A stretch of DNA of 63,874 nt, filler included, from Reticulomyxa filosa (Eukaryota > Protista > Foraminifera), in the NCBI GenBank assembly GCA_000512085.1. It is 17 parts of 17 records of this genome, joined end to end, with 100 filler letters (N's around TTAATTAATTAA, not from the genome) between each part and the next. Parts side by side here need not be neighbours in the genome. Positions count along the whole stretch, not along the records: positions 35,374 to 41,178 come from ASPP01009746.1; 16 more parts are not named here. One strand, written 5' to 3'. Under the pieces are notes generated by a model. That model saw nothing but the letters and a program-made list of their open reading frames with translations, did not search any database and was not told the DNA's origin. Position numbers and translations under genes: made by a program. Numbering within the stretch: the first letter of the stretch is position 1; each line of letters opens with the position of its first letter. Below, in pieces: positions 34,618 through 41,278 of the stretch.

Positions 34618-35439
34618 GAACCCCTTTTTCTCAAACTCCTCACCTTCAAAAAAAAAAAGGCGCTCCAAAAATTTTCAGTTGTTACTTTTTATTATTTGTA
34701 TTAATTTCTATCAAAGTTCGAAAAGAAAAAGTTAACATCTTTTTGATTCTTTGTCAATTTGGATTGAAATAATGGAGTTTTTTTTCCACCACTCCGTAAA
34801 ACCAAAAAGACAGCTCATGACCGACAAGAACGTAGTTAAAGAGTTTCAAATGGCTAACCACCCAATTTTGGCGAAATGTAAATAAACTAAAACCACTCAT
34901 TTTACTAAAAAAGAAATAGGATACGTTTGAGACTTTTTGTTTTGAAATAATCAAAGTAGAAGAAGAATACATGTATGTGATAATAATGATATAAAAAGGG
35001 CCATTGCAAAAGTTGAGCAGCGAGAGTGTTAATGACTACAAGTACTTCCAATCATCAGTAACAGATTTAACAAAATTTATGCAAGTTCTGAATTGAAAAA
35101 CATGATACTTACTTAAAAAAAAAAAAAAAAAACCAATAGAGGGTAATACTGTGTGTATACGTATCTGGTTTCAATGATGTTTTCTTTGCGCTTGATCAAA
35201 AGGAGAATTTAACAATGCAATTCGTTGAAGGGACGCAATGCAAATCCAATAAAAGCAACTATTCAATAGAAACNNNNNNNNNNNNNNNNNNNNNNNNNNN
35301 NNNNNNNNNNNNNNNNNTTAATTAATTAANNNNNNNNNNNNNNNNNNNNNNNNNNNNNNNNNNNNNNNNNNNNAAAAAAAAAAAAAAAATTAAAAAAAAA
35401 AAAAAAAAAAGGACAATATATTTCAGTCATTTGATGTAA

Positions 35440-36693
35440 ATGAATATGTGTGTATGCATGCCCGTGGAGAAAGTGATAGAAACGGAGAAGATATCGGGAA
35501 CAGGGAAGAAAACCAGAACAGAACCAGAAAGTGAAACAGGAACAAAAGCAGCGAGGATAAACTGGCCTTCATATGTAAAAGAAGGACAGTCGATTCGCGT
35601 ATTGGCACCCATATGTGCGACAGAATTCCGAGGACGTGTGCAACAGATGAATGGCTCGGATATCATCGTGAAACCTCTGGATGGTCCATTGCTCGGTCGT
35701 GAAGGATTCGATACAGTGAGACTGCATTCCGCTGCATTCATTGTCGGTATTGATTGGCAATACTCTCAACATCCAACTCTTCAGTCCTCGCCGTATGTCC
35801 CTATCCACTCCATTCCTTCCGTCACCTCGGATACGTTACATGTCAATCCGATTTTTGAGACCCCGAAAAAAATAGAATCGAATGCACAAGGGTATGCACA
35901 TTATATACACATATACATATATATGTATGTATATATTTATATATTTTGTTTTATATGTCTTGGATTCGGTACAGAAGTAGTGCGATTGATGCAGGCAAAA
36001 CAACAGTGATTAAACAAGAGCCAAACAACACATTCTCCAGCTTTAAGAGGAGTCTGAAAAACATGGAGAAGGAGGAAACAGAAATGAGAAGAGAGGTGGG
36101 CGAAAATGTTCAAACTAAGATTGAAATGGATGCTTTGATTTCAAGTAAAAAAAAGAGAAGAAGACACACTACAGGTGGGAGTCAGATCAATTCTGACCAA
36201 AAAAAGTGAGCCTGACTATCAAACACCCCAACGTCATCACAGACCTATCCAAGACGCCACACTGCCATTGCGACGTTCGAAACGATTGAGTACTTCTGCT
36301 CGTCACTATCGTCATAGTCATAGTCATAGTCATAGTCAGAGCCAGAATCAGAGCCAAAGCAAGACTTACAGTCAGAGAAATGATAGTCAAAGACGTAAGA
36401 GCGCTTTGTTGGCAACACGCAAATTGAATGCAAAAGAAGAGACACATTATCACCGATATAACTCATTCACTTCCAAAGAAAATGATGCTTTGTTGGCAGG
36501 ACTTGCCAAATACAAAACACTCCATAAAATGTCTGGGAAAGGCATGTATCATTATATGAAATTAGATCCTGTGTTTGGACCCATTCTTCATTATAAAACT
36601 AATGTACAGTTAAAAGATCGGGTTCGAGTTTTGCGCAAAAATAACGACAGTCGTCTTTTAGCCCTTTTTCCAGAATGGAAAACTATTTCCTAA
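35440..36693 (+). CDS. Protein with C-terminal telobox-like Myb/SANT domain (TRF-like)
   Basis: FTSKENDALLAGLAKY...LDPVFGPILHYKTNVQLKDRVRVL resembles the telobox consensus WTxEExxALxxGxxKY...DPxFxxxLxxRTxVxLKDKWRN. Intron at ~35892-35975 and a likely frameshift at ~36200. Confidence 0.7.
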
Positions 36694-37198
36694 ACATCTT
36701 CCAATATTTTTGTATGATATTCTCCCTTCTCACTATTCTGTTCATCATCGCGGTATCCTTTCTGCGATACAAACATGCCACTTTCTTTATTGTAATTAAT
36801 GGCATTTGCCCATTTCAATAAAAAAAAATTTTCTCATTTGTTTACATTGCAGGTCAAAAAAATAAAAACAGACTATTTGTAATCTGCAATCAGAAGAAAT
36901 ACAATTTATCGAAATTGCAACTTTTTTCATAGTTTCATACATACACTTGGATTTCTCCACAACTTAAACATTATTTAAAAATATAAAATATTGTTTTTTC
37001 ACGTAAAATTGTCTCGGTTCAGCAAAAAGTCATATGATAACTCTTAGAGAAAAAAAGTAATGTGTAAGATACCGAGAGAAGAGTATTGTAGAAATTTAGC
37101 GCAATAGAAAAAGAAATTTCAATTTGCGTTGTTAAATAAGAATAAATAGATGAACAAGTTACATACACGAACACAAACCACAAAAAAAACATCAACAT

Positions 37199-37561
37199 TT
37201 ACGATGCACCCTTTCTGAACCTCCTTGATCTTATATGGCCTGTTTGGAATTGTACGGGTTGCTTGGCTTTGTTAGACATGCGTGAGCTGGCCCGATAGTT
37301 AGTTTTGACAGCGGTGTCATCAAACGCTTTAGATTCGGTTGACACTCCATTTTCCTCATTGTTACTATTATCATCCGAATTGTTCTCGCGTACAACTTTT
37401 CTTTTGACGACGGCGACGCTGAAGCGATTCACGAGAAGAAGGCGAAGAAGATTTTGATTTGGGTGAAGAAGATTCCTCCTTTGGGGGCTTTGGATATTGG
37501 CAAAATTTATGACACAAGCATTGACAAAAAACATATTTATCAATTTTTTGTTTTTTCCCCT

Positions 37562-37592
<31 letters not shown>

Positions 37593-40500
37593 GTGTATAT
37601 ACATACAAACCGACTGCAAAATAAGTTGCAATTTGTGCACATCATAAAAAAATCTTGTAAAGTAAGTGGTGGAATCACGTTTACGAGAATTGATGGGAAA
37701 TTGGGAATGATGAACAACCTGAATTTTTTCGCGAAGTGAACCGAGAAGATTGACATCAGGACTGCGTTGGATGCACTCAAAAGTTTCGTACGGAGAAATT
37801 TTTTTAGGGAGATCTGCTTCATTGAACCCATATTTAATTAAGTCTTCACGAGTCCAGTACCAAATATTTTCCATATATTTGTTTCCCGTTTTGTTTTCTT
37901 CGTACATTCCAACGATTTTGCCAAGCCAAAATTCGCCATTGCTTGCCTCCACTCGGCATTGATCATTTAGTTGATATTGACAGCCATCGACAATGACTTG
38001 TCTGTAATAATTTTTTACTTTGGTTTCTTTGATTGGCTCACCACACCATTCGATTTGTATTTCTTTTGGTGCATCGGCCGTACCTTCATCCTCCATATTT
38101 CTATTATCTATGCTCTCATTGGTTTCTGCAGCGGCGTAATTGGTTTCGGTCATGTGTTGCAACAATCTTTCTACTAACTCCTCTTTTTTCCCCCGTGTTG
38201 TCAATCCTCTTTTTTTCAATTTCGGTCTCAAGTCCACCAATCGCAGTTTTTTTAGTCCCGTTTGTGTCAATGGTGTGGTACCAACTCGGTCCATTACTTT
38301 TGAATTCAAAGGAGTGCTTATGCTTGCTTTTGATAACACTATATATTTTCATTCCATTTTTTTGTTATCATATATACATATATATACTCTGCACATATTT
38401 TTTTTGTAAAAAAAAAAAACACTTTTGGGGAATTTATTTTCTTTGTTTGCATCGTCTTCGTCACTTTCTTGCGGTGCTCCTCTTCTTCTCTTTGGTACTG
38501 GCTCAGGTTCAGGCTCAGGCTCCGGTTCACGTTCTGGCTCTGGTTCGGGCTCTGGCTCTGGTTTAGGTACTTCCTCCTCCTCCACTTCTTCTTCTTCTTC
38601 TTCTTGCTCTCGGACTCTTCTTTCGTCAACTACCGGCAATCGACTCTTTGACTGAGTCTCAATATCAGACTCGCTTTCAAAACGTTTTTTTGCGTGCGAC
38701 TGCTTTGTGTCTACCCTTCGGATTTTTGGATTGGGTAAGTCTTCGGTCATTTCTCGTTTACGCTTTTTTTTTTTTAACAATATTTTGTTTTGTTTTTTTT
38801 TTTTAACAAAAAAAAGAATATAATTGAGTTAACCTTACGAGCACCCCAGTTGAATATGTGCTCCTTCTGTTTACGACGTTCTCTGTTGTCAAAGGTTGGG
38901 GCCATTCTTCTTCTTCTTTTTCTTTTTTTTTTCATTTTCTCTTTCTCTTTCCAGTTCCTTTTCTCTTTCTCTTTCCCTTTCCTTTTCTTTTTCTCTTTCC
39001 ATTTCTTTTTCTTTTTCTTGCTTTGATGTGTGAGCCTTTTTTTTTTTGATGTGTTGTTTGATAATGAGAAAGAAAGTCAAAATTATTTGTGATTTTTTTT
39101 TTTTTTTTTTTACTTCCGAAAGCTTGCTTTTGAGTTGTCCAATGTCGAAGGTGAATATGTTATTTTCATGTCTGAATTTATTCTTAATCTGGACAATGTT
39201 GCCACGAAGTGCTCGGATTCCATCTCTTAAATGTTTCCATTGTTTCAATTCCGTTTGCGATTTTTTTTTTCTCTTTTTTTTTTTTTTTGTTGTTGTTGTT
39301 GTTGATTCATTCCAAAGGCTTTCAGACAAATAATAAAAAAAGGGAGTGTTTAACAGTCGACTGTGCATTAAGCTTTTCAAGCAAATTTTCCTTTTCAATG
39401 TTTTGCTTTCGTAATTCAATTACTTCTTTTTCCAATGATGTTTTTTCACTCACCTTTTTTTTTTAAAAAAATTAGTTGGTTGATTTCCAGTTGTTATTAT
39501 TAATTTTTTTTTTTTTCAAAAAAGAAAAGCAAACCAAAGAATTGAATTTTTGGGACATTTCGTTATGTTTTACTTCCATCGACTTCAATTTGGAGTGAGC
39601 CTCGTTTCTTTCTCTTTCCAGTTTTTCGGACTTTTTTTTTTTTTTTTGGTGTTATTTCATTAGCAACAAAACAGCCCAAAAATAGGTGAATGAGTGAATA
39701 AGTGGAATGAAATAATATAAAAATGGAAAAGCATAAAAACTCGGTCAAATTCCAATTCCATGATTCTGTTATGTTCCAATTGCAAGTCGCAAATTTCTTC
39801 AAAGTGGGCATCTACTAATTTGTCCCTTTCAATCTGTTTCATTGCCATTGAAAAAAAAAAAAAAAAAAGGACGCAAGGTTACAAAAACAAACAAACAAAC
39901 AAACAAATAAATGAATGAATGAATGAATGAAGGAACAAGAATAAACTCGCATTTCATCCATCAATTTGGAGGTACTTTGATGAGCCGACGTGACTAAGTT
40001 TCGAATTACTTCAGAGTGTTGCTAAGAATGGATGTGATTGTTGCAAAGACGTTGGGAAATGTATTGATTTGTCTAAAGCTATGCTAAGGGATTAAATATA
40101 TATACATGTGTGTATATATATATATATGTATATAACCTGAATAATGTTGTTGTTTTCAATTTCCAATTCTCGACAGCGCTTCCAAGCATCGACAGCAAGT
40201 TTGTACAGACTATATTTATTGAACTCTTGCCACGACACGTCTTTCCTTCGAGCGCTCGTATCTTTTCCATCGTCTGTTTATGTTTGATGAGATAAGAAAA
40301 GGAGGGTTAAAACTCACTGGTTGTCAAAGCCCCTTTCACAGCAAAGGGAGGGAGGAGGGGAGGGGAAGGGAGACGACGATGACGATAGAAGACACTCAAC
40401 AAGGAATGGCGGGTGGTTTCTTAAGCGCCCGATGGGAGTTGACCATTGGCTTTACAACAATGTCGCTATTTTCGGCGCTGAAATTCAACGAATCTAACGT

Positions 40501-41128
40501 TGGCATAAAGTCCTCCCTAGTGTGTGTGTGTTTGTATATACATATACATATATATATGTATATATATGTATATGCATATATGTATATGTATGTATTATAT
40601 GTATCCACCGTCCATTGGCACGACATACAAGGGAGAGACATGCACAGAGCAACAACAGAACTGAGTAAATTGTGCAGTGGCAATCATGGAAATGAATGCA
40701 TGTCCAGTGAAATAGTCGGCTAAGATCCTTGTCAATTCACAGTCACGAAAAGGGATATGAACAGAAGAAGAAGAAGAAGAAGAAGAAGAAAACGTTGACG
40801 TCGATGTCGATGTCGATGTCGATGTCGATGCAGATAACATAGACGAAGAAGAAAGAGAAGAAGAGACAGAAGAAGAAGAAGAAGCAGCAGCAGCATTGTT
40901 CGGAATCAAATCGCGTTGTCTCAATTTCATCAAGCATCGTCTCAAACAGGTCAACGACAAATTGATATTTTTCGCTTCATTGTACTCGTGTGAGTTGACT
41001 GCCGCCGTAGTGCGTTCCGCGCCCGCCAAATCACACAAGCATACCTTGCCAACCACCTTCGATTCGTAGTCATGCTTTATCACTTCTATCACGCAAAGGC
41101 TGTGACTACGGCTTGAGTTCTGTTCCAT
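37199..41128 (-). CDS. Kinesin-6-like motor with coiled coil, EP-rich linker, SAP domain and BAH domain; 5'-partial, multi-exon
   Basis: Switch I NSSRSH, LCDLAGAER, EAKNINLSLTCLRRC, HIPFRDCELTRIL.DYFTG and TLDSLNFSA. Phase-consistent exons lead to SAP (~38154-38255) and BAH (~37635-38009). Confidence 0.8.
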
Positions 41129-41278
41129 TGTTTTTATTTCACGTTTGTATATAATACATAATACATATATGTATATATNNNNNNNNNNNNNNNNNNNNNN
41201 NNNNNNNNNNNNNNNNNNNNNNTTAATTAATTAANNNNNNNNNNNNNNNNNNNNNNNNNNNNNNNNNNNNNNNNNNNN

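What the first reader, a model, noticed from the sequence alone, without database searches (positions are those of the whole stretch)
37199..41128. Kinesin-6-like motor fused to SAP and BAH chromatin domains: a candidate chromatin-reading kinesin
Seen in sequence: the motor C-half (NSSRSH, LCDLAGAER, EAKNINLSLTCLRRCL..LR, HIPFRD.ELTRIL.DYFTG, TLDSLNFSA) links by phase-compatible GT-AG introns through these exons: YDGKDTSA..NNNIIQ | QHSEVIRN..DEMR | IERDKL..EFDR | SEKLERE..FNSL | VSEKTSLE..AQST | RKKKSQTE..KLSE | AHTSKQEKE..TGVL | RKREMTED..(EP)n..KFPK | MLSKAS. The path needs one indel in the A-run at ~38925. The last exon encodes LKKLRLVDLRPKLKKRGLTTRGKKEELVERLLQH (SAP) and YYRQVIVDGCQYQLNDQCRV..FWLGKIVGMYE..IWYWTRED..YFTRFFYD (BAH). 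Established: the LCDLAG/FFTG/FSA signature is typical of kinesin-6 (MKLP1/MKLP2), SAP domains bind DNA, and BAH domains bind nucleosomes or methyl-lysine. Inference: a spindle motor that attaches directly to chromatin or marked nucleosomes, for example to move chromosomes in a multinucleate cell. The chromokinesins I know use other tails (kinesin-4 Cys-rich/ZBZ, kinesin-10 HhH); I know of no kinesin-SAP-BAH architecture.
Basis: partly seen in the sequence, partly recalled or inferred. Interest (0 to 1): 0.85.

Follow-up and report, generated by a model that had tools for sequence, protein, structure and literature searches.

The report
Foraminiferan kinesin with chromatin-reader tail
A giant amoeba (a foraminiferan) and some marine relatives carry a microtubule motor protein whose tail holds a DNA-gripping SAP domain and a BAH domain of the type that reads methylated histones, a combination I found described nowhere, which suggests a motor that can hold marked chromatin directly.

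Summary
The piece is a whole 5.8-kb contig of the Reticulomyxa filosa assembly. It carries the 3' part of a 12-exon gene: kinesin motor C-half, coiled stalk, SAP, BAH. NCBI splits it into four short genes and misses the motor exon. The fusion is confirmed outside this contig: P0008 (1741 aa, mRNA-like) has complete motor + SAP + BAH in one ORF, and metagenomic contig L009 runs from switch I to BAH in one unbroken 1890-codon frame. An R. filosa paralogue shares the intron positions. The motor falls on the kinesin-6 side of three trees (100/99; 94/96 mixture model) but lacks the animal loop-6 insert. The BAH fold is solid (pLDDT 94, TM about 0.74 to BAHCC1). Its three cage positions are all Trp in the orthologues, and the cage decays in the paralogue, whose motor motifs also decay. 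The single frame break in an A10 run is probably an assembly slip; no reads were available. SAP-bearing kinesins are known (kinesin-13C); kinesin-BAH was absent from a 1624-kinesin survey and from my paper searches. Likeliest role, inferred and untested: a convergent chromokinesin linking methyl-marked chromatin to spindle microtubules.

The parts
40662..41119 (-). Exon 1 of the piece: kinesin motor C-half (switch I NSSRSH, switch II DLAGAER, alpha4, poly-Ser insert in loop 12, alpha5, last beta strand); N-half lies off the contig
   Evidence: Pfam PF00225 1.5e-24; KIF20A among best PDB hits; boundaries from homologues
40517..40661 (-). Intron 1, 145 nt, phase 2; same position in paralogue L002
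40401..40516 (-). Exon 2: helix alpha6 and neck-linker-like strand; its 3' donor is the least certain junction
   Evidence: 36% identity to P0008 neck, E 5e-7
40137..40273 (-). Exon 3: start of neck coil
   Evidence: 50% identity to paralogue L002, E 7e-9; alignment
39114..40021 (-). Exons 4-8 (40021-39947, 39833-39741, 39630-39535, 39453-39355, 39272-39114), all phase 0: coiled-coil stalk
   Evidence: exons 4-7 have no Pro/Gly; a/d positions enriched in hydrophobics; exons 4, 5, 6, 8 match paralogue in order
38839..39035 (-). Exon 9: E/K/R-rich charged helix; contains the frame break
   Evidence: length mod 3 = 2; no GT donor before the stop at about 38891; downstream-compatible frame has no ATG
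38923..38932 (-). A10 run at which the reading frame breaks (probable homopolymer assembly error; not verified by reads)
   Evidence: no runs listed
38423..38762 (-). Exon 10: disordered linker with EP repeats and NLS-like basic patches
   Evidence: weak match to paralogue P0002
38154..38255 (-). SAP domain (in exon 11, 38338-37611)
   Evidence: PF02037 35.8 bits > cut-off 23.9; 38-50% identity to orthologue SAP regions
37611..38057 (-). BAH domain with Trp at all three cage positions (codons at 37928, 37862, 37856)
37488..37610 (-).
37199..37487 (-). Last exon: Ser-rich, basic tail; stop at 37371 as assembled, or at 37199 across a second A-run (37397-37400)
   Evidence: GC 0.37-0.50 to about 37200, then 0.27; orthologues end in acidic/basic tails

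Best explanation
One gene encodes an N-terminal kinesin-6-like motor, a coiled stalk, a disordered linker, SAP and BAH (shown, by homologues). The protein most likely dimerises through the stalk and walks to microtubule plus ends (inferred from the N-terminal motor). Its tail binds chromatin twice: SAP on DNA, and the triple-Trp BAH cage on a methylated histone lysine (inferred from structure; which mark is not predictable). It would then act as an independently evolved chromokinesin. It tethers marked, probably heterochromatic, chromosome regions to spindle microtubules and moves or holds them during nuclear division in multinucleate foraminifera. The A10 break in R. filosa is most likely an assembly slip in an intact gene.
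For: Single-ORF orthologues: P0008 and L009/P0033; both have an intact P-loop, switch I and switch II. Motor trees put window, P0008 and L009 together (99/98; 83/99) on the kinesin-6 side (100/99; 94/96). BAH fold: pLDDT 94, best Foldseek hits BAHCC1, DNMT1, ZMET2, TNRC18, ORC1, all methyl-lysine readers. Cage spacing +22/+2 equals SHL Y41/W63/Y65 (PMC6013494). W/W/W holds in the window and six related BAHs. In paralogue L002 the motor switches, SAP and cage are all decayed, suggesting motor and reader work as one unit. NLS-like patches in all three tails. The neighbouring gene on this contig also breaks at an A-run.
Against: No binding, motility or localisation data. No RNA or DNA reads for this locus. 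BAH domains also bind non-histone partners and nucleosome surfaces. The His that gives H3K27me3 specificity is Arg here, and the DNMT1 acidic pair is missing. Animal kinesin-6 proteins act at the midzone and in cytokinesis, not as chromokinesins (own knowledge). Kinesin-5 grouping was not rejected (p-AU 0.079). The P-loop of the R. filosa copy is not on the contig. Co-decay in the paralogue could be plain pseudogenisation.
Confidence: 0.5

Rival explanations
1. Conventional kinesin-6 job (spindle midzone, nuclear fission or cytokinesis). SAP-BAH parks the motor on chromatin or in the nucleus until anaphase, or the BAH cage binds a non-histone partner (e.g. a chromosomal-passenger subunit) rather than carrying chromosomes.
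For: Kinesin-6 placement. Several Aurora-type and minimal CDK sites in the orthologue tails. BAH domains can bind non-histone motifs (ASI1-SUVH6, abstract of PMC9910501). MKLP2 moves the passenger complex from chromatin to the midzone (own knowledge).
Against: No MKLP1 Arf6-binding tail or loop-6 insert. A complete methyl-lysine-type cage plus a DNA-binding SAP is more than parking needs.
Confidence: 0.25
2. Bulk chromatin transport outside mitosis: after nuclear-envelope breakdown (Zerfall) the motor drags chromatin threads or genome units along cytoplasmic microtubules to partition them into gametes.
For: Foraminifera release endoreplicated chromatin into the cytoplasm as threads that resolve into haploid units without visible mitotic figures (PMC10936158). 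Orthologue stalks are long, about 1000-1400 aa.
Against: Zerfall was described in Allogromia and a few other genera. I saw no report of it for Reticulomyxa, and there are no stage-expression data.
Confidence: 0.1
3. The fusion is real in the lineage, but this R. filosa copy is truly frameshifted: a pseudogene, or a motor-coil protein plus a separate SAP-BAH protein from the ATG at 38750.
For: One, possibly two, frame breaks. NCBI splits the locus. The genome is repetitive and fragmentary (PMC13746701). The paralogue is decayed.
Against: Breaks fall only in A-runs, as in the neighbouring gene. No nonsense codon in about 880 codons. Switch motifs, SAP and cage are intact. The gap holds a canonical intron whose donor is shared with the paralogue. 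The downstream-compatible frame of exon 9 has no ATG.
Confidence: 0.12
4. Chance adjacency of a kinesin gene and an unrelated SAP-BAH gene.
For: Short SAP-BAH proteins occur in the databases.
Against: Two unbroken ORFs join motor and SAP-BAH. The short ones are open to their contig ends (L005, L006, L010) and share pre-SAP motifs with the full proteins.
Confidence: 0.02

Closest known systems
Kinesin-6 (MKLP1/KIF23, MKLP2/KIF20A, KIF20B); Plasmodiophora brassicae P0027 as nearest named rhizarian
   Same: Motor groups on the same side of the tree; FTYG before the P-loop (P0008) and aromatic-x-x-G end of alpha5 (DYFTG, QYLHG) rather than SLGG; N-terminal motor plus coil
   Different: No loop-6 insert (40 residues from P-loop to beta4 against 105-137); no MKLP1 Arf6-binding domain; has SAP-BAH, which P0027 lacks
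Chromokinesins kinesin-4 (KIF4) and kinesin-10 (Kid/NOD)
   Same: N-terminal motor, long stalk, C-terminal chromatin-binding tail: the likely working principle
   Different: Grouping with kinesin-4 rejected (p-AU 0.002); tail is SAP + BAH, not Cys-rich/ZBZ or HhH (own knowledge of those tails); a histone-mark-type reader is built in
SAP-bearing kinesins in PMC2867816 (ciliate kinesin-13C SAP-KISc; one divergent Chlamydomonas KISc-SAP)
   Same: Kinesin motor and SAP in one chain
   Different: Other family, or unclassified; SAP is N-terminal in 13C; no BAH in any of 1624 kinesins
Methyl-lysine-reading BAH domains (BAHCC1, SHL/EBS, ZMET2/CMT3, DNMT1 BAH1, ORC1, TNRC18)
   Same: Fold (TM 0.70-0.76), cage positions aromatic, conserved Asp after the cage
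   Different: Cage is W/W/W rather than Y/W/Y or Y/W/F; specificity residues differ; attached to a motor instead of a methyltransferase, ORC or repressor

Membership tests
Kinesin superfamily | Motor domain with switch I, switch II and P-loop | tested here: met
   Switch I/II in window; P-loop is off the contig but intact in P0008 and L009
Kinesin-6 | Motor groups with MKLP1/MKLP2/KIF20B | tested here: met
   100/99 (LG+G4), 94/96 (C20 mixture). References lacked kinesin-10, -13, -9, -12; window row is a half motor; kinesin-5 union not rejected, p-AU 0.079
Kinesin-6 | FTYG before the P-loop; aromatic-x-x-G at end of alpha5 | tested here: met
   (FTYG seen in P0008 and L009; DYFTG in window)
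Kinesin-6 (animal type) | Long loop-6 insertion | tested here: not met
   P0008 40, Plasmodiophora 38, animal kinesin-6 105-137 residues from GKT to beta4; region not on the window contig
Kinesin-6 (MKLP1) | Arf6-binding tail PF16540 | tested here: not met
   Not found in P0008, P0033 or window exons
Kinesin-6 | Midzone localisation; CYK4 or CPC binding | not testable with these tools
   needs cells
Kinesin-4 chromokinesin | Motor clade with KIF4/KIF27 | tested here: not met
   AU test p 0.002
Kinesin-10 chromokinesin | Motor clade with Kid/NOD | not tested
   no kinesin-10 among the fetched references
Kinesin-10 chromokinesin | C-terminal HhH DNA-binding motifs | tested here: not met
   no HhH Pfam hit in window exons, P0008 or P0033
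SAP domain | PF02037 above gathering score | tested here: met
   35.8 vs 23.9 bits; also P0008, P0033, P0004, P0010
BAH domain | BAH fold / PF01426 | tested here: met
   Window 16.4 bits, below cut-off, but orthologues P0008 and P0004 pass; AF2 pLDDT 94 and Foldseek E 2e-9; ESM features 0.95
Methyl-lysine-reading BAH | Three aromatic cage positions | tested here: met
   W49/W71/W73, spacing equal to SHL Y41/W63/Y65; by alignment, cage geometry not inspected in the model
H3K27me3-reading BAH (SHL/EBS/BAHCC1) | His-x-Asp that reads H3P30 | tested here: inconclusive
   Asp kept; window has Arg where four related BAHs (P0008, P0004, P0010, P0011) have His, one residue off the usual spacing
H4K20me-reading BAH (DNMT1 BAH1) | Y772/W793/D799 plus E816/E818 | tested here: not met
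   first three positions matched (W/W/D); the two Glu are Arg and Pro (residues from PMC9329655)

The most novel reading that the evidence does not exclude
Foraminifera have a kinesin that reads a histone methyl mark directly and couples marked chromatin to microtubules without adaptors. It could be a lineage-specific chromosome-segregation or Zerfall-partitioning device in cells with thousands of nuclei.
Probability: 0.35. Interest if true: 0.92.

Novelty: new variant of a known kind. Interest (0 to 1): 0.8.

Why it matters
Known chromokinesins bind DNA or condensin without regard to histone marks, and kinesin-6 reaches chromatin only through adaptors (own knowledge). A motor with a built-in methyl-lysine reader would tie an epigenetic state directly to force on chromosomes, and would be a separate origin of the chromokinesin design. 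How foraminifera segregate highly endoreplicated genomes among thousands of nuclei is almost unknown at the molecular level (PMC10936158). This gives a concrete protein whose two halves can be tested in vitro. It also shows that the R. filosa annotation hides multi-domain genes by splitting them at A-runs.

Tried and rejected
Single-sequence folding of the BAH failed (pLDDT 36); folding with an alignment worked. Word-based homologue searches with the SAP-BAH exon and with the P0008 tail returned only the query itself. Two metagenome-contig scans found nothing. The PDB ranking of the full P0008 motor does not separate families. The BAH tree does not resolve whether the R. filosa BAH pair is sister to the marine group. 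In one quick mixture tree the window half-motor sat among animal kinesin-6 rather than with P0008. The genome paper and the EBS paper were not held. Paper searches for kinesin + SAP + BAH, kinesin motor domain + BAH domain, and kinesin-6 + foraminifera gave zero hits; the library lacks most subscription papers. I could not reproduce the exact NCBI 207-aa model, so junctions around introns 2-4 keep some uncertainty.

Full report
Source. The piece 35374-41178 is the whole 5805-nt contig ASPP01009746.1 of assembly GCA_000512085.1. A protein from another contig of the same assembly is named Reticulomyxa filosa, taxid 46433, Foraminifera. That assembly is very fragmented: 50,809 contigs, N50 3.6 kb, intron length about 87 nt, median intergenic distance 426 nt (PMC13746701). 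NCBI calls four short minus-strand genes here (207, 159, 133 and 307 aa) and an antisense ORF over the motor exon, so the architecture is invisible in the annotation.

Observation. Exon-by-exon Pfam scans give kinesin (E 1.5e-24, model positions 195-307), SAP (35.8 bits, above cut-off) and a weak BAH (16.4 bits, below cut-off). Eleven GT-AG introns link 12 exons; most are 14-29% GC against 31-47% in exons, and introns 3-9 are all phase 0. No gap is long enough to look intergenic. Exons 4-8 are coiled-coil-like. The only internal break is the A10 run at 38923-38932. No GT donor lies before the resulting stop, and the frame that leads on into exon 10 holds no ATG. Three corrections follow from homologues: exon 1 begins at 41119, the first donor is at 40661, and an eleventh intron (37610-37488) follows the BAH. 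Coding-like GC continues to a stop at 37199 in another frame, reachable across an A4 run, and the neighbouring plus-strand gene also changes frame at an A7 run. Three breaks in A-runs on one contig point to assembly slips. That is inference: no sequencing run was listed.

Method note. The joined-protein search and the joined fold were left out. In one search five exons were concatenated inside a script only to compare a length with the NCBI model; only the length and a few terminal residues were printed, and nothing joined was saved or searched. The frame break was never read through.

The fusion is real. A search with the BAH alone against 1.84 billion representatives gave 20 hits. P0008 (1741 aa) carries kinesin 47-393 (E 2.5e-75), SAP 1426-1460 and BAH 1519-1643, all above Pfam cut-offs. 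It is one ORF on a 5489-nt JGI contig with short flanks and an upstream in-frame stop, as an mRNA would be. A motor search with P0008 then found P0033. Its metagenomic contig L009 has the motor N-half in upstream exons and a single stop-free frame of 1890 codons from switch I through SAP to BAH. Further SAP-BAH proteins (P0004/P0021, P0010/P0024) are C-terminal pieces: three of their four contigs are open to the 5' end, and they share two pre-SAP motifs with the full proteins. P0006 has a weak SAP and an alignable BAH but was not shown to be such a piece. R. filosa itself has a paralogue (L002) with a kinesin gene call directly before a coil-BAH gene call. Window exons 1, 3, 4, 5, 6, 8, 10 and 11 match it in order, with introns at the same places. 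The intron just before switch I is shared by the window, L002 and L009. The organisms behind P0008 and L009 are not named. A foraminiferan origin is inferred: their motors group with R. filosa, and their BAH groups (96/99) with a Nonionella stella protein. The R. filosa stalk and linker are shorter, about 450 residues against 1000-1400.

Motor family. In three trees the window half-motor, P0008 and L009 lie on one side of a branch with animal KIF23/KIF20A/KIF20B and a Plasmodiophora kinesin: SH-aLRT 89, 100/99, 94/96 under a mixture model. Union with kinesin-4 is rejected (p-AU 0.002); union with kinesin-5 is not (0.079). Kinesin-6 sequence signs are present, but the animal loop-6 insert is not. 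Kinesin-10, -12, -13 and -9 were not in the reference set. I call it kinesin-6-like, probably a divergent rhizarian kinesin-6. The Plasmodiophora protein has no SAP or BAH, so the tail looks like a gain within or near foraminifera; this rests on one outgroup.

The BAH is confirmed by PDB sequence hits (DNMT1 BAH1, E 4e-5), ESM features (0.95), and an AlphaFold model (pLDDT 94) whose best structural matches are BAHCC1-H3K27me3, DNMT1, ZMET2-H3K9me2, TNRC18-H3K9me3 and ORC1-H4K20me2. The cage positions are W49/W71/W73, with the same spacing as SHL Y41/W63/Y65 (PMC6013494). All three are Trp in the window, P0008, P0033, P0004, P0010, P0006 and P0011. Residues that select H3K27me3 or H4K20me3 in known readers are not cleanly kept, so the mark cannot be named. 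In the paralogue the cage is R/W/C, the SAP has decayed, and the motor switches read NSDSSH and DLAGAN. The window copy is therefore the likelier working one.

Mechanism. Shown: domain order, intact catalytic motifs in orthologues, conserved cage. From established knowledge: N-terminal kinesins move to plus ends, SAP binds DNA, caged BAH domains bind methyl-lysine. Inferred: a dimeric motor whose tail grips DNA and a methylated histone together, pulling or holding marked chromatin on spindle microtubules in nuclear division (0.5). Rivals: a midzone kinesin-6 that uses the tail for parking or for a non-histone partner (0.25); chromatin transport during Zerfall (PMC10936158; 0.1); a broken R. 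filosa copy of a real fusion (0.12); chance adjacency (0.02). I put the existence of the fused architecture in the lineage above 0.95.

Novelty. A survey of 1624 kinesins from 45 eukaryotes lists SAP-kinesin (ciliate kinesin-13C) and one divergent Chlamydomonas kinesin-SAP, but no BAH (PMC2867816 supplement). Three full-text searches found no paper joining kinesin with BAH, or kinesin-6 with foraminifera; subscription papers are not covered. It likely works like a chromokinesin but is not a member of kinesin-4 and lacks the kinesin-10 HhH tail. Verdict: new variant of a known kind, interest 0.8.

Noticed in passing
L002:1490-6234 (ASPP01008503.1, R. filosa): Degenerate paralogue, split by NCBI into a kinesin gene and RFI_11664: switch I NSDSSH, switch II DLAGAN, decayed SAP, cage R/W/C, same intron positions. 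A pseudo-kinesin or a decaying copy.
   Followed up: partly
window 35458-36693 (+): Convergent gene with a C-terminal Myb-like domain that resembles telomere-repeat factors by eye (ESM 0.84, lead only; no Pfam or PDB hit); its frame changes at an A7 run, 36199-36205.
   Followed up: partly
P0011 (Nonionella stella, EukProt): F-box protein carrying the same triple-Trp BAH at its C-terminus: the reader module is re-used on a possible ubiquitin-ligase adaptor.
   Followed up: no
L008:406-884 (JGI 3300030594): A third Reticulomyxa-like BAH (45-50% identity to the window), broken into several frames on a 933-nt contig.
   Followed up: no
window 40760-40900 (-): About 45-residue poly-Ser/Thr insert in motor loop 12, a microtubule-facing loop; P0008 has a short poly-Gln there.
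   Followed up: no
window introns 5-9 (39740-38763): Introns end in A9-A16 runs directly before the AG instead of a polypyrimidine tract, mostly with T-rich 5' halves; could pair into stems.
   Followed up: no
window 40400-40274 (intron 2): GC-rich (0.48) for an intron and contains a consensus GTGAGT donor near 40315; may hide a mini-exon or a longer exon 2.
   Followed up: partly
P0020 (Balamuthia mandrillaris): RCC1-repeat + chromo + BAH + ankyrin protein, another unusual chromatin-reader combination.
   Followed up: no
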